A stretch of DNA of 64,000 nucleotides from Zygnema circumcarinatum SAG 698-1b. Taxonomy: Eukaryota; Plantae; Zygnematophyceae. A program made the translations under genes and the position numbers. The DNA lies in the NCBI GenBank assembly GCA_037447605.1, contig CM074812.1, positions 2,728,001-2,792,000 on the forward strand, read 5' to 3'. This document shows, one piece after another, positions 20,816 through 50,579 of the stretch (within the stretch, counting starts at the first letter, position 1; every line of letters starts with the position of its first letter). The notes beneath the pieces are model-generated. The model saw only the letters and a program-made list of their open reading frames with translations, did not search any database and was not told the origin of the DNA.

Positions 20816-21441
20816 GCACTCCCATTGGTAGGTGCCTTCGGACTGTTCAGCTATGGGAAAGGCCCTTTGGGCCATCCGGGACCTTCCGGCTCGTCTGTCG
20901 TCCGCGATCCCTGGCGTCGCAGACCGCCGCATAAGGTCGCAGGAGGTCGCAGAGCGGTAATTTGAGGCGCGATCTAGTCGCAGGAAGTCGCATAGTCGCA
21001 GATCCGTCGCAGGATTTGGCGCCTGTTCTTGTTTACCTGCTCCTGCAAGGACGGAGGGGGACCCTTGGAGCTGTCCTGGCAGCCATGGCTGCCAGCTCTT
21101 GAAGCAACCTTGGACAGCGTTGTGAAGCCCGTGAACTTAAATCTTGGAGTCGGCGAAAATCTGCATGCGAGTGTTGACAGATAGAGCTTTTTTTCCTTCC
21201 ATTCAGGGAAAGTTCATTTCCTTCCAGGTGTTGCCAGCTGTGAGAGAGATAGAGGAGAGAGAGAGCGAACGAGAGAGAGAGAAGAGAGAGAGTGGAGGTG
21301 GAGAGAGGGATATTAGAGAGATACAAGTAGGGTTGAGAGGGGGAGAGAGTGAGAAAGGGAGAGAGGGAGAGAGATAGGAGGGAGAGACAGAGAGAGAGGG
21401 AGTAAGAGAAAGGTAGAGGGGGAGAGAGGGAGAGGGGAGCC

Positions 21442-24400
21442 ATGGAGCGGTATGAGCTTGTGAAGGATATTGGATCAGGGAACTTTGGAGTGGCTCGGTT
21501 GATGCGTGACAAGAAGACGAGAGAGCTCGTAGCTGTGAAGTATATTGAACGAGGAGATAAGGTAGGGCTGCTTTTGTTTTGTCCTTTTTTGTTTCGTTTC
21601 CTAGCATGTGTAGTCTATTGGTATAAAGGCATCAGATAGTCGCAGCATGATTCGTTCATGCAGAGCAATTCTATGTGGATGCATATTATCATAATATCTT
21701 TTCATTCCATGATTTTTTAGGTTTACCAATTGTTTCTCGGGTCCCTGTACTATGCAGGCATGCCGTTCTTGCAAGATCATGCATTATCTGCAGCATGATT
21801 TTGCTCACCTGCATTTTCTCCCCCTCTCTGTCACACTCCCTCTCTTCCACTCTCTCTTTCTCTATTCATTCGCTCTCTCTCCCTCTCTCTTTCTCTCTCC
21901 CCCCTCCCAGTCTCTGTCTGTCCCTCTCCTAAGCATTAATTTGATGTGTGGCTGCAAAATGCGTTGCATGGCATAGCATGATGTCAAAGACTGCACGCTG
22001 TCATTGTATGCAGCATAACATGACGAGAGGCCTCGCGAGAAAACATTTGTCTTCCTTCTCTTCATTGCAGGCAGCATTGCTTTGTCCTGTAGCGGCAGCA
22101 AGCATGCAGAGAGAGAGAGAGAGGAAGAGGACGAGGATGAGTGAGAGTGGAAGAGTGGGAGAGGGAGTGTGAGAGAGGGAGAGGGAGGGATTGGACGAGG
22201 GAGTGGGCGAGAGCGAGGGAGGTGAGAGTGAATGAGAGAGAAAGCAAGCATGCCTGCATGCATGGCTCGGTCTGAGCATCTATGTGCATGTACCTCAGTT
22301 GAACCAATAACAGGAGTTTCAGAAGGGCTTGGTCCTGCTTATTATCATTGTTTCTGGGACCATATTATGCATGCGCATGCATTATGTGGTTCCAAATACA
22401 TTTGAGTACATGAGCAGGGGCGGCTCCTCCGTACGGCATACTTTAAACCATCCTCCTGATGATGTATGAATTGCACCATACATACATGCATGTATGTATG
22501 CCATGATTGTCGATGCCATGGCATGCCTCCTCTGCGCTGCTCATGTGACGCTGCAGGAGTCTTGCGTAGCATGATTTCCTGCATCATGCCGACGTCAACA
22601 TGCAGCATACTGGCATCATCTAGTGGTAGCCATGCTGTATTCTTCATATTTTGTTTCGCCTGCGGCATAGTGGAAAGAAATGCCAATGCAAGTGACATTT
22701 AGGGTTGTTGAAAACGTAGAACTCAGATGTAACTGGAACTGTTACTGAAACTGGAACGTCAGTGGAGGCAGCAGTCTTAGTATATCTTTGTCACAAAGAA
22801 TACCAGTGTACGGAAACAAGCTTAGCGACTAATTTTCAAAATCAAAATCGTTGCGTATGGCGTTCTGGACTTGCTTGCGAGCAGATTGATGAAAATGTTC
22901 AAAGGGAGATCATCAATCACCGTTCTTTGCGGCACCCTAATATTGTCCGTTTTAAGGAAGTAAGATTTCACTAGCTCTGCTTCTTCTTCTCCCCCTCCCT
23001 CTCCCTCTCCCTTTCCCTTCCTCCTCCCTCCCTCCTCCCTTCTCCCTCCTCCCTCCCCCGTCCTCCCTCCTCCCTCCCCCGTCCTCCCTCCTCCCTCCGC
23101 CGTCCTCCCTCCCCCGTCCNNNNNNNNNNCCCCCCCCCCCCCTCCCCATTATTCCTCTTTCGCTTCCAATTCTGCCCTCTCCTCCTCTGCTGCTCCATCG
23201 TCGGCTTCCCTCCTCCCTCCCTTATCTTTATTTCTCGTAATTCCCTTTTCATCTTGCCGTTCGTCGACATCCACCCTCCTACCTCCCCTTCCCGCCTGCC
23301 CGCCTAACTCATTTCCTCCTCTTTTAAGGAGGGAACAAGCGGTAGGGGTAAGACTGCTTGCAGTTGTTTAAAGTGTTCTTCTGTCCAGCCATTAAGGGCG
23401 CCTATGTGCGGCAAAGATGAGTGCTCTCGGTCTACTGCCCTCATGTATGTATTTATGTTTGTATAATTGTATCTGTGTGTTTGCAGGTCCTTTTGACTCC
23501 TACCCATCTCGCTATTGTGATGGAGTATGCTGCTGGAGGGGAGCTTTTCGAACGTATCTGCAACGCCGGGCGCTTTAGTGAAGATGAGGTTAAACCATAC
23601 TCTGCACTTGCGTGTGAGGGGGAAGAGAGAGAGTGGTTGTGAGGGAGAACTCCATGTTAGTCTTAAAGTTGTCAACTAGTGTAGTGGAGGAAATAGGCAA
23701 CTGCTGTGTGTTCGTGAATGCGCAATTGAGAGAGAGCGAGCGAGAGAGAGAGCGAGAGAGAGGGAGAGAGAGAGAAAGGGGGAGAGAGAGGGAGATTTGC
23801 CTTTTGCATTCTCTGTTCCTTACCCTCCGTCATTGAAGCATACGTACTGCAGGAGAATGTGCGTGTTTGACACAGAGATCAATTCTTCTGCAGAAGCGTT
23901 TGTTAACCTTTCTCGGATGACACCGTTATGTGCATGCAGGCGCGGTTTTTCTTCCAGCAGCTAGTCTCAGGAATCAGCTACTGCCATTCCATGGTAAGAA
24001 AGAGGGAAGGAAAAAATCGCACATGCTTTTATCCCCATATGATGATGATGATGATCGTCATCATCATCATTATCTGTGATCTTTCTGGATTTATTTTGGC
24101 CCAAGTTACAAAACAGTTTGGGAAGTTGGGGAATTATCATACTTGTGAACTGGCTACTGTTTCCATCTTCATCATCTTTCATTCATATGCATTCGTGTGC
24201 CATTAGATCCATTCTGATGTTTTTGAGGCTGGTTCCTCAGACTGTGCTGTTTACGCATGCGTGGGAGGGAGAGGGGAGAGGCAATGAGAAGAAAGGGGAG
24301 AGGGACAGAGAGGGAGCGGGGGCGATAGTGAGTGAGAGCGTGAGAGCGAGGGGAGGGAGGGGCGAAGGGAGGGAGAGAGTGGGGAAGCGAATGAGAGAGA

Positions 24401-27400
24401 GCGTGGGGGAGAAGGGGGGAGGGAGGGAGAGAAAACGGGGGACAGAGACTGAGAGCGTGAGAGTGAGAGTGAGAGAGGTGGGGAGCGAGGGGGTGTGAGA
24501 GAGTGAGAGTGAACACTTGAGCTTTTCGACGTGTTGGAGATACCTCTCTCTATCTTTCTCTGCACGGCAATTTTTGAGTGTTAATCAGAGTCGATTGTAT
24601 GTGTATGAATAGATTTTTTGTACTCTTTTTTTCTGCCGTACATGCACATGCTATTTTTGGGATCGTCATTTTTGTCGGGGCGGGGGATTGGGAATTATTC
24701 AAGTTGTACAGGAGTAGGTTCAGTACGGCTGCATGCATGTATATTCAACTTGCTGATTGATCCGCTTTTTATTAATTCAACTTTAAATCGCCCACTTTTT
24801 TTTCAGCAAATTTGTCATCGTGATTTGAAGCTAGAAAATACTCTACTTGACGGAAGTCCAGCTCCCCGATTGAAGATTTGTGATTTTGGGTATTCTAAGG
24901 TATATCTTCCCTCTTGCACCCTTCTTGTTTCTCCTCGTAGATCAAGGGAGTCCGGTACTTTCCTGTAAGTCGGTTGTTCATTACAAGAAAGGACAGTCTT
25001 CTATGATACATAGAGCCTAGAAGTTGGCTATCATAGTTATTTGTCACTTTTTTTGTTTGTATATGTGTAAAAATCGTTTATGTATATGTTTATGTATTAT
25101 CTATATTGGAGGGTTCCAGAAAGCACCATCACACTAGCCTGATATCTGCTTGTATGGCTTTATGGATGGGCAGTCTTCTTTACTCCACTCGCAACCAAAA
25201 TCAACTGTCGGCACTCCCGCCTATATTGCTCCGGAGGTGCTTTCAAAGAAAGAATATGACGGGAAGGTGAGAACGATGATGAGATTTCAGGACTCCGCGG
25301 TGTTGCTTTGTTCACCTTTGGAGGATTGCTTCAGGAGTAAGGGAGAGAAGAAGAGAGCGCGAGAGAGAGGGAGACAGGGGAGGGAGAGAGGGGGAAAGTG
25401 AGAAAGAGAAAAAGGGGGACGAGAAGAGAGCGCGGGAAGCAAGAGAGAGATAGGGAGAGGAGAAGGAGATGGGGAGGAGGGGAGGGAGAGGGGGGGCAGA
25501 GCACGAGCGGGAGAGCGCGAGAGAAAAAGGGGGAAGAGGGAGAGATAGAGAAAGTGCCAAAGAGAGCGCAAGGGAGAGAGGAGAGAGAAAGAGGCAGAGA
25601 AAGGGACAACACTTGGGCTGTCAGAATCTTAGAATCAGACTTAACCTTTGCATTTCAATGATGTGAACATTTCTTTGACAGTTCGCCCTTTGGATTTTCA
25701 CGGTTTGCTAAGTGTCAAACTTCCAGGGCTCGTCCATGCCTAACAGTCTTGACCCTGTGGAGATATTCGCATTGATTTCATTTATCGAACTCTGTTTTTC
25801 TTCTTTTCCCTTGCCGCGTGTTTCTCTATGCAGACTGCGGATGTATGGTCGTGTGGAGTTACTCTCTATGTGATGTTGGTAGGAGCGTACCCATTTGAGG
25901 ATCCCGATGACCCTCGGAATTTCCGCAAGACCATTGGGGTATGATTTTATAAAAAGCCTTACACCCTTCTTGGCTTCCTGAGGGAGGGAGTGAGGGAGGG
26001 GGGAGGGAGGGGAGAGGAGGGGAGACGAAGGGCTGCTATACACGCCCATAAGGATATACAATGAACAAAATAGAGGAGGGAAAGGTCGGTGGCGGTGGTG
26101 CCCATAGTCAAAACTTTGCTTTCTGTCACTTTTGCTTGCTTCTGTGTGTTTGCACATCCTGCATGGAACATCCTTTATTTCTTTCCGAACTTTCCTGGGG
26201 TTTGTGCTGCACTCTATGTCTCTTCTGCTGTGTGCTCTCTCTCTCTCTCTCCTCTCTCTCTCTCCTCTCTCTCTCTGTGCTTGTTCTCTTTTTCTCTCAT
26301 TCTGCCCCAAACTTTAACCTAATACTCAAACACACGCCTTATGGTTTCTAGTGTCCCGGGTTGCCCCACAGACGCAGAGAATGCTGATGTGAATCCTTAG
26401 TGGTTTTCAGTGGTTTCTGGTGTCCGGGTTTTGGGCACACCTGACCCGTGTGGGCTCATGCTTGGCTCTGCTTGTTTCTTGTTTTGTGGGTGTGGCGTGG
26501 CATGTCTTCCTTTGATCGTCTCGGCGTCGTCTGCGTCTGCATGCTGCTGCTGTGGGGGGAGGGTTGGACACACAATTTATCCATATTTGTGCTCTCAGCG
26601 CATCTTCACTTCGCAATATTCGATCCCAGAAACAATACAACTATCTTCTGAATGCCGGCACCTTCTGTCCTGCATCTTTATTGTTGACCCTTCTAAGGTA
26701 TGACGGCAGGTTGGTTCGGCTTTGCCCTCTCTGTTGTGTGTGTTGTCTCACAGCGCATCATGAGCGTCCAGTACGTCATCCCACCATATGTCCGTTTATC
26801 GGCAGAGTGCAAACACCTCCTGTCCCGCATCTTTACTGCGAATCCTGCCAAGGTACGGATAGCAGAGGATCATCAAGCTTTCGTCCTTCTCACTCTCTCT
26901 CTCCCCCCCTTTTTCTCTCGCACGCCCTCCTTCCCGCTTTCCCTCCCTTGTGCACACCGCCCCACTCGCCTCTATCTCTCTGCCCACTTACTCGCTCTCA
27001 CTTTCTTCAGGGCTCTCGCCCCTCTCCCTCTCCCTCCCCTTTCTCTCCCCCCCCCCCCCGCCCCTTAGTACTATGCTACTGTCGAATAAAACTTAGTTTC
27101 CGCAGGTCCGTTTCTCTCTTGCTGTCCATTGCAGTCAGTTCGTCTCACTTTTGTCTTTTGTCTTTTGCATTTTCCTTCTTGGTTCAACCCAATGAGTCTG
27201 TCCTTCTTCCCTCAGTCCAATTGTAGAAAAGGATATCGAGTGTTGCCTTCATTGCTATGCGGCTGGATAATTTTTGTATATAGATGCTTAAATGGAAATA
27301 GATAAACAGACAACAAATAGTACGAGAAAGACATGACAGGTTCCATGTGTATGTAAAAGCTGCTTTTTTTATTCTGGCATCGTCTAGAGCTGCTGATGAA

Positions 27401-28126
27401 CATTATGCTGAAAGTTATGCTTGCTTGTTGTTGTTGCTTGTTTCACTGTTATATGCATTCCTGTCCTTCATGGAATCATTTACTGATGATTCACGGACAT
27501 CATCTTTTTGTCTTTTTATCCCCTGTCTTCTCTTCCCCTCTTCGCTTTCCATTGTTTCTTCCTCTTTCCTCCCCACCTTTGTTCCTTCAACTCTTCCCTC
27601 CTCTCTTCCCTCTTCCCTCCTTTCTTCCCTCATCCTTTCCCTCCTTCCATCTTTCCTTCCTTCCCTCCTTCCATCCCTCTTTCCCTCGGTCCTCCTTTCC
27701 CTCCTTACGTCCTTCCCACCTCCCTCCCTCCCTTTCCTCCTCCCTCCTTCATTCCCTCCTTCCCTCCTTCCATCCTTCCCTCCCTGCCTTCCTCTCTCCC
27801 TCCACCCTTCCCTCCCTCCCTCCGTCCCGCCGTCCCCCTTACAGCGAATTACCATGCCCGAGATCCGGCAGCATGACTGGTTCCGCAAGAACCTCCCTGC
27901 TGACCTCATGGCTGACAACGACCCCACCTACCAGTATGACGATCCCAACCACCCCCCCCAGAGCATAGAGGAGATCATGCGAATACTGCAGGAGGCTCGC
28001 GTGGCGGGAACGGGCGCCCCCGTGGGTCAGTACTTGGGAGACGGGGGGCGCGGAGAGGAGGACGAGGACATGGAGGCGGAGGGTGACGATTTGGAGAGCA
28101 GTGGGGAGTTTGTCTGCGCCATGTAG
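21442..28126 (+). CDS. SnRK2: SNF1-related protein kinase 2 (SnRK2, OST1/subclass III-like C-terminus), 340 aa
   Basis: Exons 21442-21561, 22885-22959, 23487-23588, 23940-23993, 24807-24899, 25174-25266, 25834-25938, exon 8 (26599-26697 or 26754-26852) and 27845-28126, all GT-AG and phase 0. Motifs [40 protein letters not shown] and an acidic tail ending [13 protein letters not shown]. Confidence 0.97.
26599..26697 (+). CDS. SnRK2: SnRK2 alternative exon 8a ([33 protein letters not shown])
   Basis: 99 nt, CTCAG acceptor, AAG|GTATGA donor, no stop codon, paralogous to exon 8b. Confidence 0.8.
26754..26852 (+). CDS. SnRK2: SnRK2 exon 8b, closer to the canonical sequence ([33 protein letters not shown])
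   Basis: 99 nt, CACAG acceptor, AAG|GTACGG donor; resembles the typical SnRK2 sequence [33 protein letters not shown]. Confidence 0.9.
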
Positions 28127-29327
28127 AGAGCTAATGAGGGGAGGGAGAGGAGGAAAACAATGGAGGTGCTGGGAGATCCACGCAGTGCAACGCAACGGAG
28201 AATTGGTAGAGGGACACGGGGAGTGGAGGAGGGAGGGGAGAGAAAGGGGAGGCCGGAAGGATGGAAGCATAGTATAGGGCTGTCTGGGAGGGTAGGTCTG
28301 CTGCTGCTTGTTCATAGAAAGGGCTGCTGTGGCTGTTGCTGCCTTTTATGTAGAAAGAAAGGAGATGAGGATGGTGCTGGGATGCGTGTCCTCCCCCCCC
28401 CCCCCCCCCCCCCCCCCCCCNNNNNNNNNNCCCCCCCCCCCCCCCCCAACACCCCCATTCCATGCTGTTACAGTTCAATTTCAGTTATGTTGTTGGTAGC
28501 AGTCAGCGCGTCGGCTGCCACGTGTATGTCTTACTCGTCTGCAGCAGCTGCATGTAAAGTGGAAGGTGAAGACAGGACGTGCTTTCTTGCTATATTGGGC
28601 GGGTCCCGCATGGAACAGACTGTTAAGCGGAGGAAATTTTGCTGTTTTCTCCTAAGGGAATCAATACAGGTTCCTAGAAGAGTTTCTGCCGGTCGACTTT
28701 TCCATCCCATGTATGCCATGGAGCGGACCTAGAAATGTTGACATGGGGCATGGGGTGTGGCCCAGCATTTCAGTCCAGCTTATAAGTTCCCATGGTATGT
28801 GCTAAGGAGATGAATTTCTACTCTTGAGGTTTTGCATCTTTCAACATTCTGTTTTCGTTTTTCTGTTGACGAAGAAGTGATTGCAAGTTTCAGGTGTGGC
28901 TCATCCGTAATGGTGTTTCCAAAGTTGAAGTGACTGCGAAGTAATATCTTTGGTTATGGGTCGCTTTTGAGAGGAAAAGGGGAAGGGGAGAGGGGGAGGT
29001 GGAGGGGAAGGGGGAGTGGGAGAGTGGCAGTGGGGGAGGGAGTGGGAGTGAGGCAGGCGGGGGGGGGAAAGGAGGGAGTGGAAGAGAGGCAGTGGGGGAG
29101 GGGAAGGAGGGAGTGGGAGTGAGGCAGTGGGGGAGGGGGAGGGAGTGGGAGAGAGGCAGAGGGAGAGGGGAAGAGCGGGACGGAAGGTTGCATCGCGTCG
29201 CGTCACGTTACGTCACGTTTCTTCATGTCACGTCATGGCATGGCACGTGACGTTCAGCCGCGGTCGTCCGCCGGCGTTTCAGCGAAGCTTCCAAGTTGTC
29301 TTTTTCTAGTCCGAGATTCCCCCATAA

Positions 29328-49730: not shown

Positions 49731-50579
49731 ATGGACAACGACGACGAGGATATCCACATGGAGCTCGAGACCGTTCTCAAAACCCTAACGGCGTACTGCA
49801 CACAGCGAACGACCCTCTTCCTTTACTCAATGCAGGACGAACAAAACCGCTGCGTTTCCGGAACATCCGAAGCCGAAAAACAAACTTTCGATGCCTTCCA
49901 ACAATGTGTTTCCGCGGGCCATTTCAGAAAGCAGAGAAGACAATGTTGGGAAATCGTGCTGCCCCGACCAATCCCGGAAGAGTTTCAGCTGCCCGTCTAC
50001 GACGACGAGACGTTCCAAAAAACTTTTCGGCTGCCCAGACCCTCCTTCCAACGGCTGCTTGAGTCAGTCAAAGGCCATTTGGCGACTAACCCACCGGCGG
50101 GATTGGCCAATATTCCCAATAGGAGACTTTCCCCAGAGAGACAACTAATGGCGGGAGTTTACCGGCTTGCACAGGGAGGATATCTCACGCTGCCCGCGAA
50201 AATTTTTGGGATTGCAAGGCCGACGATAAGTAAAGTTCAAGCTCGAGTTTTGAAAGCTATTATTGAAGTGGAGGGCCCCAAAAGGCAGCTTTGGCCGCAA
50301 GGGGAAGCTTTAGAGAGTCTTGTGAAGGCAGTGAGAAGCAAACATGTTGTCCCAAATTTCGCTATGGAATGTGTAGACCATCATTTCCATCTTTTGCCGT
50401 TACAAAAGCAGTGGAAAGGGTTGGTGGGAGTGATAGACCAACCGGACCCATCACGACTGCAGGCTTTAGTGATGACTTGCTGCATTCTGCAGAACATTTT
50501 ATTGGACGATGGGTATGACTTTGAGGCGGAGGTGGAGGAGGTGGTGGAGGTGGAGCAGATGAAGGAGGAGGAGGGGTGA
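49731..50579 (+). CDS. Harbinger transposase-derived protein (HARBI1/ALP1/ALP2-like), catalytic core deleted, 282 aa
   Basis: Intact frame with Harbinger motifs DDETFQKTFRLPRPSF, LSPERQLMAGVYRLAQG, FGIARPTISK, WP...VPN..CVD, joined almost directly to C-terminal QKQWKGL...TCCILQNIL. A possible 5'UTR intron runs from 48341 (GTAAGT) to 49717 (TGCAG). Confidence 0.72.
   Translation: MDNDDEDIHMELETVLKTLTAYCTQRTTLFLYSMQDEQNRCVSGTSEAEKQTFDAFQQCVSAGHFRKQRRQCWEIVLPRPIPEEFQLPVYDDETFQKTFRLPRPSFQRLLESVKGHLATNPPAGLANIPNRRLSPERQLMAGVYRLAQGGYLTLPAKIFGIARPTISKVQARVLKAIIEVEGPKRQLWPQGEALESLVKAVRSKHVVPNFAMECVDHHFHLLPLQKQWKGLVGVIDQPDPSRLQALVMTCCILQNILLDDGYDFEAEVEEVVEVEQMKEEEG

What the first reader, a model, noticed from the sequence alone, without database searches (positions are those of the whole stretch)
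26599..26852. Tandemly duplicated exon 8 in SnRK2: candidate mutually exclusive splicing of the ABA/osmostress kinase
Seen: two paralogous 99-nt, phase-0 exons (8a 26599-26697, 8b 26754-26852). Each has a YAG acceptor, an AAG|GTA donor and an open frame, and they are 56 nt apart (26698-26753). The two exons keep the same length and shared motifs (RI..QY.IP...LS.EC.HLLS.IF...P.K) despite many nucleotide changes, which suggests purifying selection. Established: this exon encodes part of the kinase C-lobe, and a very short donor-to-branch distance can sterically force either/or exon choice. Mutually exclusive exons are generally regarded as rare in plants. Inference: one locus makes two SnRK2 isoforms. 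Exon 8a swaps the conserved SRIF Arg for Cys and changes nearby Ser/Thr content, which could alter redox or phospho-regulation or partner binding. Retaining the 56-nt intron gives an immediate stop (GTA TGA).
Basis: partly seen in the sequence, partly recalled or inferred. Interest (0 to 1): 0.88.

Follow-up and report, generated by a model that had tools for sequence, protein, structure and literature searches.

The report
Twin alternative exon in algal SnRK2
A stress-signalling kinase gene (SnRK2) of a streptophyte alga holds two intact look-alike copies of one exon that cannot both be spliced in. The spare copy is old, strongly conserved and used in mRNA of related algae, but the RNA data available for this alga show only the other copy in use.

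Summary
A ten-exon SnRK2 gene (21442-28126, + strand) has two 99-nt, phase-0 exons, 8a (26599-26697) and 8b (26754-26852). Both are open, both have AG/GT splice sites, and they lie 56 nt apart.

For it:
- An 8a-type exon (26/33 residues identical, including the Arg-to-Cys change) is the only exon 8 in full-length spliced mRNAs. These come from two related algae and five RNA runs.
- 8a is as constrained as 8b (dN about 0.10 each, synonymous sites saturated).
- Trees made without exon 8 place the 8a-type and 8b-type genes of those algae as sisters. Their exon 8 groups with our 8a and 8b respectively. This implies one ancestral gene carrying both exons.
- The spacer has adenines only within 11 nt of the 8a donor or within 4 nt of the 8b acceptor, so 8a cannot be spliced to 8b.

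Against it:
- In four RNA assemblies of this alga, only the exon 7 to 8b joint is seen (depth 517-923).
- 8a lies at intron-level depth, inside an unbroken unspliced contig.
- Contigs drop rare forms, so minor or conditional use of 8a is untested.

Most likely this is an ancient sterically enforced mutually exclusive pair, with 8b as the default. No paper in the library describes this for SnRK2.

The parts
21442..28126 (+). SnRK2 (subclass III-like) kinase gene: ten coding exons counting both copies of exon 8. Exon coordinates: e1 21442-21561, e2 22885-22959, e3 23487-23588, e4 23940-23993, e5 24807-24899, e6 25174-25266, e7 25834-25938, 8a, 8b, e9 27845-28126 (includes the stop).
   Evidence: Gene model: all borders AG/GT, all exons phase 0, 340-aa product. 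E 1e-174 to SRK2E/OST1 structures for the close homologue P0004. The e6-e7, e7-8b and 8b-e9 joins are seen in RNA contigs.
25834..25938 (+). Exon 7. Its donor (25938|gtatgatt) is the shared upstream donor for 8a or 8b.
   Evidence: Joint 25937/8 to 26753/4 at depth 517-923 in all four runs.
26599..26697 (+). Exon 8a, the alternative copy. 33 codons: [33 protein letters not shown].
   Evidence: Open frame with AG and GT sites. 26/33 residues identical to the sole exon 8 of P0004 and P0177, which come from spliced mRNAs of related algae. dN 0.099 with saturated dS. Groups with those exons at 96/95 support. Only intron-level RNA depth in this alga.
26698..26753 (+). 56-nt spacer. It starts with an in-frame stop (GTA TGA). 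Adenines occur only at +3, +6, +11 and at -4, -2. In between is a 41-nt A-free stretch, rich in T, G and C, running up to 8b.
   Evidence: The gene's other eight introns are 274-1323 nt long. Any branch adenine for the 8b acceptor lies 11 nt or less from the 8a donor.
26754..26852 (+). Exon 8b, the default copy. 33 codons: [33 protein letters not shown].
   Evidence: Depth about 800-1060, and joined to exon 7 and exon 9 in RNA contigs. This type occurs in Mesotaenium, Closterium, Netrium and other zygnematophyte SnRK2s.
27845..28126 (+). Exon 9: kinase end, SnRK2 box and acidic C-terminal tail (…SSGEFVCAM) plus stop. It is the common acceptor for either exon 8.
   Evidence: X4 contig 26 joins 26850 to 27843, which is the same join as 26852 to 27845.

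Best explanation
Exons 8a and 8b are an ancient pair of homologous exons in one SnRK2 gene, spliced in a mutually exclusive way.

- Choice of exon: exon 7 joins either 8a or 8b, and the chosen exon joins exon 9. 8b is the default and gives the main kinase.
- Why not both: the only usable branch adenines for the 8b acceptor lie within 11 nt of the 8a donor. U1 on the 8a donor and U2 on the 8b branch site therefore exclude each other, and the 56-nt spacer cannot be removed as an intron. This steric block is the only safeguard, because including both exons or skipping both would stay in frame.
- What changes in the protein: the swap replaces the end of helix alphaG, the alphaG-alphaH loop and helix alphaH (OST1 residues 232-264). 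That surface lies next to the PP2C-contact region. The 8a form would probably differ in docking of phosphatase, substrate or regulator.

Shown here: the anatomy, the age and constraint of 8a, its use in mRNA of related algae, and 8b being the dominant form in this alga.

Inferred: that this alga still splices 8a in, at a low level or under particular conditions, and the functional effect of the swap.
For: - Anatomy.
- Use in relatives: an 8a-type exon is the only exon 8 in complete mRNAs from run ERR2041114 (P0004, L001) and runs ERR12684107-110 (P0177, L006-L009).
- Constraint: window 8a against L001 or L006 gives dN 0.099, with dS 1.79 or saturated. Window 8b against L002 gives dN 0.100, so the two exons are equally constrained. 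L001 against L006 shows 13 nt differences in exon 8, all synonymous.
- Time depth: four-fold sites between the window and L001 differ at 72%.
- Neutral-drift simulation: the chance of no stop and at most 7 residue changes is 0.04 at 0.2 substitutions per site and 0.0016 at 0.3.
- Conflicting histories: trees without exon 8 put P0005 (b-type) with P0004 and P0177 (A-type) at 94-96/90-93 support. AU tests reject a clade of all b-type genes (p 0.0075 and 0.0099). The exon-8 tree joins window 8a to the A-type exons (96/95) and window 8b to the b-type exons (91/95). Together these point to a common ancestral gene with both exons.
- Position in the protein: exon 8 maps to OST1 232-264. AlphaG is one of three regions of SnRK2.6 that bind HAB1 (PMC4333806).
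Against: - In four RNA-like assemblies of this organism (three studies), the only joint from exon 7 goes to 8b.
- The contig 26283-26782 runs unbroken through both 8a borders in X1, X2 and X3, and no loose end is listed at 26599 or 26697.
- No protein carrying this alga's 8a was found among 5.8 billion proteins, either full length or as short fragments. Neither blank is strong, because this gene's own 8b protein is also missing from that collection.
- Closterium NIES-68 has only 87 nt between exons 7 and 8 and no 8a, so the pair is not universal.
- No genomic locus of a close relative could be read to see the pair in tandem elsewhere.
Confidence: 0.6

Rival explanations
1. 8a is a recently retired alternative exon. 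It was used for most of the lineage's history, which explains its conservation, but this alga no longer splices it in, and 8b is now constitutive.
For: No 8a junction appears in four RNA assemblies, and 8a sits at intron-level depth. The 8a acceptor has a shorter, adenine-interrupted pyrimidine tract than the 8b acceptor. Closterium shows that the exon can be lost.
Against: 8a has an intact frame, an AG acceptor and a GTATGA donor. Only 7 mostly conservative residue changes separate it from the expressed 8a-type exon, despite saturated synonymous divergence. The simulation allows no more than about 0.2 substitutions per site of neutral drift. Assembled contigs cannot show absence of a minor form (notes).
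Confidence: 0.22
2. 8a did not arise in place. It was copied into intron 7 from a separate paralogous SnRK2 gene that carries an 8a-type exon, by gene conversion or ectopic recombination. Its conservation would then be borrowed from that paralogue.
For: Related algae do have a separate gene whose only exon 8 is of the 8a type. Exon 8b shows unusually low divergence from the P0001 transcript (8/99 nt against 120/642 nt, p 0.0095), which hints that exon-scale sequence exchange may occur in this family.
Against: It requires precise insertion of one exon with both splice sites, in phase, 56 nt upstream of its homologue. 8a against 8b has dS about 1.7, and window 8a against the A-type exons is saturated, so no recent donor is visible. 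The backbone trees and AU tests place the A-type genes inside the b-type group rather than as an old separate lineage. No 8a-type paralogue close to this alga was found.
Confidence: 0.07
3. 8a is a non-coding splicing element, such as a decoy or poison exon. It would modulate 8b use or yield a stop-containing RNA through the GTA TGA read-through, rather than encode a protein variant.
For: Retention of the spacer gives an immediate stop. The contig around 8a has about twice the depth of the gene's other intron contigs in all four runs.
Against: The substitution pattern is that of a coding exon: mostly synonymous or conservative changes and dN/dS about 0.06. In related algae the same exon type is plainly translated as part of a complete kinase.
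Confidence: 0.06
4. Both exons are included together, or 8a is constitutive, giving a kinase with a duplicated 33-residue segment.
For: Joint inclusion would stay in frame (374 aa).
Against: The exon 7 to 8b joint skips 8a at depth 517-923 in all four runs. The 56-nt spacer has no usable branch adenine. All homologues have a single copy of the segment.
Confidence: 0.01

Closest known systems
Sterically enforced mutually exclusive exons, with alpha-tropomyosin exons 2/3 as the classic case (branch point too close to the upstream donor; from my own knowledge of the literature)
   Same: Two adjacent homologous exons of equal length and phase. The spacer is too short, and the branch site of the downstream exon lies next to the upstream exon's donor, so the two exons cannot be joined to each other.
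   Different: This is a streptophyte alga rather than an animal. The branch point has not been mapped. Use of the upstream exon is not yet shown in this organism.
Splice isoform separation after gene duplication (Abascal, Tress and Valencia 2015, PMC4494069; Lambert et al. 2015, PMC4417111)
   Same: In the related algae, two sister paralogues each carry one of the two ancestral homologous exons (P0004 and P0177 the 8a type, P0005 the 8b type). The window's gene keeps both. This is the pattern reported for 11 vertebrate gene duplications.
   Different: It is seen here in green algae and inferred from transcripts only. The paralogues' genomic loci were not available, so each may still hold the other exon silently.
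SnRK2.6/OST1-type (subclass III) SnRK2 kinases and their regulation by clade A PP2C phosphatases (PDB 3UJG)
   Same: The kinase domain is nearly identical (E 1e-174), with an SnRK2 box and an acidic C-terminal tail ending SSGEFVCAM. Exon 8 covers OST1 232-264, next to the alphaG region that contacts HAB1 (PMC4333806).
   Different: No land-plant SnRK2 in the searches carries a tandem exon 8 or an 8a-type segment. The alternative splicing reported for SnRK2 in the papers read is alternative 3' site use and intron retention, not exon swapping.
Other candidate mutually exclusive exon pairs noted in this same genome (earlier scan notes: ferroportin, RGLG, B3 factor)
   Same: Tandem homologous exons of equal length. 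Follow-up agents reported either/or use for three of them.
   Different: Those are AI notes that I did not check. For the SnRK2 pair, the either/or use is not yet seen in RNA.

Membership tests
SnRK2 protein kinase (subclass III-like) | Full Ser/Thr kinase domain with closest similarity to SRK2E/OST1 | tested here: met
   P0004, at 86-91% identity to this gene family's members, hits 3UJG, 3ZUT and 3UC4 at E about 1e-174. Pfam PF00069 is precomputed on all homologues. The window protein is 98% identical to P0001 over the columns compared without exon 8.
SnRK2 protein kinase (subclass III-like) | SnRK2 box and acidic C-terminal (ABA-box-like) tail | tested here: met
   Exon 9 encodes ...[13 protein letters not shown]... 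followed by an Asp/Glu-rich tail ending SSGEFVCAM. This aligns to the OST1 tail ending SSGEIVYAM.
Mutually exclusive homologous exons | Adjacent exons of the same length and phase with detectable sequence homology | tested here: met
   99 nt each, phase 0, 18/33 residues and 61/99 nt shared, tblastn E about 1e-9.
Mutually exclusive homologous exons | Each exon is found in mature mRNA joined to the common flanking exons | tested here: inconclusive
   8b: met (exon 7-8b and 8b-9 joins). 8a: not seen in four assembled RNA runs of this alga, but contigs drop rare forms. An 8a-type exon is joined to both flanks in mRNAs of two related algae.
Mutually exclusive homologous exons | The two exons are never, or rarely, included together | tested here: met
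   The dominant joint skips 8a, and no 8a-8b joint is listed. The spacer lacks a usable branch adenine.
Mutually exclusive homologous exons | Both exons are conserved under purifying selection across species | tested here: met
   dN 0.099 for 8a and 0.100 for 8b against their counterparts, with saturated dS. There are 0 nonsynonymous changes among 13 differences between the two A-type exons.
Steric-hindrance mechanism of exclusivity | The branch point of the downstream exon lies too close to the upstream exon's donor | tested here: inconclusive
   Sequence only: adenines at +3, +6 and +11 from the donor, then none until -4. The branch point was not mapped experimentally, and the minimum workable intron length in this alga is unknown. 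The gene's other introns are at least 274 nt, and the Closterium introns are 87 and 93 nt.
RNA-structure (docking/selector) mechanism of exclusivity | Competing conserved base-pairing around the exon cluster | tested here: not met
   Folding 26570-26880 is no more stable than shuffled sequence (z -0.43). Only the local region was tested.

The most novel reading that the evidence does not exclude
The core osmostress/ABA-pathway kinase of a close algal relative of land plants is regulated by an ancient, sterically enforced exon swap. This swap has persisted since before these zygnematophyte lineages split. The rare 8a isoform would be switched on under particular stress or life-stage conditions and would change the alphaG/alphaH surface (Arg to Cys, plus five Ser/Thr positions kept as hydroxyl residues across lineages). 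That would alter control by PP2C phosphatases or partner choice. In a sister lineage the same two isoforms were later split into two separate genes.
Probability: 0.35. Interest if true: 0.8.

Novelty: new member of a known kind. Interest (0 to 1): 0.6.

Why it matters
SnRK2 kinases are the hub of osmotic-stress and ABA signalling. Their regulation in zygnematophyte algae bears on how plants adapted to land. Verified mutually exclusive homologous exons are scarce in the plant lineage, and the searchable literature reports none for SnRK2.

This locus offers a compact, testable case with three useful properties:
- One gene carries both exons, while sister algae have the two versions in separate paralogues. 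That is a natural experiment on the interchange of alternative splicing and gene duplication.
- The swapped segment lies beside the phosphatase-docking surface.
- Because both exons are in frame, exclusivity must be enforced by the splicing machinery itself.

If 8a turns out to be unused in this alga, the locus still records how an alternative exon is retired.

Tried and rejected
- Full-length search for proteins carrying 8a: using the words of the 8a-type region, only P0004 (and its cluster mate P0177) truly carry it. Spirogloea P0025 and an Oxalis protein are ordinary types.
- Short-fragment search for this alga's own 8a: no candidate. This is uninformative, because the gene's own 8b protein is also absent from that collection.
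- Profile of the two 8a-type peptides against 1.84 billion representatives: 180 hits, all ordinary SnRK2 exon 8. A few carry LLSCIF, but none has the FTSQY...SCIF.VDP signature.
- Metagenome scan: one land-plant SnRK2 contig (L005) with SCIF but no tandem exon.
- Genomic loci of relatives: only Closterium was reachable (L003, no 8a). Mesotaenium endlicherianum P0002 is not on record as a gene position. P0003 is an environmental transcript.
- Local RNA fold: no excess structure.
- AlphaFold2 on a 14-sequence alignment failed (mean pLDDT 37), so helix assignments rest on the alignment to 3UJG and on general kinase knowledge.
- Run accessions were not found in any paper, so the related algae remain unnamed.
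- Joint inclusion of both exons was considered and rejected.

Full report
**What is in the sequence**

The window carries a SnRK2 kinase gene on the + strand. I assembled ten coding exons, counting both copies of exon 8: e1 21442-21561, e2 22885-22959, e3 23487-23588, e4 23940-23993, e5 24807-24899, e6 25174-25266, e7 25834-25938, 8a 26599-26697, 8b 26754-26852 and e9 27845-28126. All are phase 0 and all have AG/GT borders.

With either exon 8 the product is 340 aa. With both it is 373 aa and with neither 307 aa. All four versions stay in frame.

8a and 8b are each 99 nt. 8a translates to [33 protein letters not shown] and 8b to [33 protein letters not shown]. They share 18/33 residues and 61/99 nt. 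The spacer 26698-26753 is 56 nt and opens with GTA TGA.

**RNA evidence in this alga**

Nine runs of the same organism were found. I laid four of them (X1, X2, X3, X4, from three studies, Logan contigs) on 25780-28180.

- Depth is RNA-like: exons at about 500-1060, introns at about 10-90.
- The only joint leaving exon 7 is 25937/8 to 26753/4, that is exon 7 to 8b. It is present in all four runs at depth 517-923.
- 8b is joined onward to exon 9 (X4 record 26).
- 8a lies within one contig (26283-26782) that runs unbroken from intron through 8a and the spacer into 8b in X1, X2 and X3. Its depth is 25-88.
- No joint or loose end is listed at 26599 or 26697.

8b is therefore the dominant exon in all the data I could see. 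Contigs drop rare variants, so these data show presence and not absence.

Two oddities remain. The contig holding 8a has about twice the depth of the gene's other intron contigs in every run. In X4 that contig stops at 26709.

**8a-type exons in related algae**

I used the open frame 27302-28123 as a length carrier and scored only its exon 9 part. This retrieved full-length SnRK2s. The closest are:
- P0001, from a transcript in SRR8128906;
- Mesotaenium endlicherianum ME000293S04937 (P0002);
- an environmental transcript (P0003);
- P0004 and P0005, both from RNA assembly ERR2041114.

All carry an 8b-type exon except P0004. Its only exon 8 reads [33 protein letters not shown], which matches our 8a at 26/33 residues, including FTSQY, IPE, SCIF and VDP.

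Its cluster mate P0177 has the identical peptide in a different backbone. P0177 was assembled independently in four runs, ERR12684107-110. The 8a type is therefore a real, translated exon in at least two related organisms.

**Constraint on 8a**

- Window 8a against the A-type exons gives dN 0.099, with dS 1.79 or saturated.
- Window 8b against the b-type exon of P0005 gives dN 0.100 and dS 1.13.
- The two A-type exons differ at 13 nt, all synonymous.
- Four-fold sites between the window and L001 differ at 72% in exons 1-7, which is saturation.
- In a neutral-drift simulation of the exon, the chance of keeping an open frame with at most 7 residue changes is 0.50 at 0.1 substitutions per site. 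It falls to 0.04 at 0.2, 0.0016 at 0.3 and zero at 0.5.

So 8a has been kept as coding sequence for nearly all the time since these lineages split.

Five hydroxyl positions (4, 5, 8, 12 and 16) are Ser or Thr in both 8a-type lineages, with Ser/Thr exchanges at positions 8 and 12.

**History of the pair**

Trees built without the exon 8 columns place P0005 (b-type) as sister to P0004 plus P0177 (A-type), at 94-96/90-93 support. They place the window with P0001. AU tests reject trees that hold the b-type genes together to the exclusion of the A-type genes (p 0.0075 and 0.0099).

The exon-8-only tree does the opposite. Window 8a groups with the A-type exons (96/95), and window 8b with all b-type exons (91/95).

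The simplest reading is that the common ancestor had one gene with both exons. The window's lineage kept that arrangement. The other lineage duplicated the gene, and each copy now expresses one exon. This matches the splice isoform separation described for vertebrates (PMC4494069).

8a-type exons keep Arg20 and Asp30, as in OST1, where all b-type exons have Lys and Asn. This includes Closterium and Netrium. It hints that the exon duplication is older than those groups, but it rests on two easily changed sites.

Closterium NIES-68 has only 87 nt between exons 7 and 8 and no 8a, so 8a was lost there or never present.

**Mechanism**

The spacer has adenines only at +3, +6 and +11 from the 8a donor and at -4 and -2 from the 8b acceptor. 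Between them lies a 41-nt A-free stretch, rich in T, G and C.

Any branch adenine serving the 8b acceptor is therefore within 11 nt of the 8a donor, or inside 8a itself. Splicing 8a to 8b is not feasible, and recognition of the 8a donor should block the 8b branch site. This is the steric scheme known from alpha-tropomyosin (my own knowledge).

The gene's other eight introns are 274-1323 nt. Because both double inclusion and double skipping stay in frame, nonsense-mediated decay cannot police mistakes. No excess local RNA structure was found (z -0.43).

The 8a acceptor has a shorter, adenine-interrupted pyrimidine tract, which fits 8b being the default. That last point is inference.

**Likely effect on the protein**

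Exon 8 aligns to OST1 residues 232-264. By homology with other kinases (my own knowledge), this covers the end of helix alphaG, the alphaG-alphaH loop and helix alphaH.

The alphaG helix is one of three SnRK2.6 regions that bind the PP2C phosphatase HAB1 (PMC4333806; also PMC10380758). Altered docking of phosphatase, substrate or regulator is therefore a reasonable but untested guess.

The Arg-to-Cys change is not unique to 8a. LLSCIF also occurs in a few other SnRK2 sequences. My structure prediction failed (pLDDT 37).

**Verdict**

The exon pair is ancient, homologous, constrained and built so that only one copy can be used, and the 8a type is expressed in related algae.
- In this alga, only the 8b isoform has been seen so far.
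- I put about 0.6 on a live mutually exclusive pair with 8a as a minor or conditional form. I put about 0.2 on a recently retired exon, and small odds on insertion from a paralogue or a non-coding role.
- No paper in the searchable library describes exon swapping in SnRK2 or mutually exclusive exons in Zygnematophyceae.
- Earlier notes of this scan report other either/or exon pairs in the same genome. I did not check them.

Noticed in passing
window 26283-26782: The unspliced contig that contains 8a has about twice the depth of the other intron contigs of the same gene in all four runs: X1 25.6 against 11 and 12.5; X2 88 against 42 and 33; X3 49.6 against 27 and 14; X4 44 against 19 (no contig of X4 was laid on the intron after 8b). 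This runs against the usual 5'-to-3' decline inside an intron. It could hide low-level 8a-containing RNA.
   Followed up: partly
window 26709/26710: In run X4 the contig covering 8a ends at 26709 (ggcag|gttggt), 12 nt past the 8a donor. No contig covers 26710-26752. This may be a coverage gap or a cryptic splice site.
   Followed up: no
window 26754-26852 versus L004: Exon 8b differs from the closest transcript (P0001, L004) at only 8/99 nt, against 120/642 nt in exons 1-7 (Fisher p 0.0095). At four-fold sites the figures are 4/15 against 58/92 (p 0.011). This could be exon-scale gene conversion, or synonymous constraint from splicing signals in an alternatively used exon.
   Followed up: partly
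window 21240-21430, 22090-22250, 22980-23290, 23640-23800, 24260-24530, 25330-25610, 25990-26050, 26230-26290, 26880-27070, 27500-27840: Nearly every intron of this gene, and the 5' leader, holds long GA-rich or CT-rich low-complexity tracts. An assembly gap of 10 N lies at 23121-23130 inside one of them.
   Followed up: no
L005 1732-1830 (metagenome contig Ga0182155_1003310); P0046, P0048, P0118: Other SnRK2 sequences, including one that looks like a land-plant gene, also have Cys in place of the SRIF arginine (HLLSCIF). The Arg-to-Cys change is therefore recurrent in the family and is not specific to 8a.
   Followed up: partly
P0025 (Spirogloea muscicola SM000002S05533): The exon 8 segment of this divergent Spirogloea SnRK2 ([33 protein letters not shown]) groups with the 8a-type exons at 88/89 support in the 33-residue tree. 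This is probably through shared ancestral states.
   Followed up: partly
window 49731-50579: Another first-reader note on this window reports an intact Harbinger-derived ORF with its DDE core deleted. I did not examine it.
   Followed up: no
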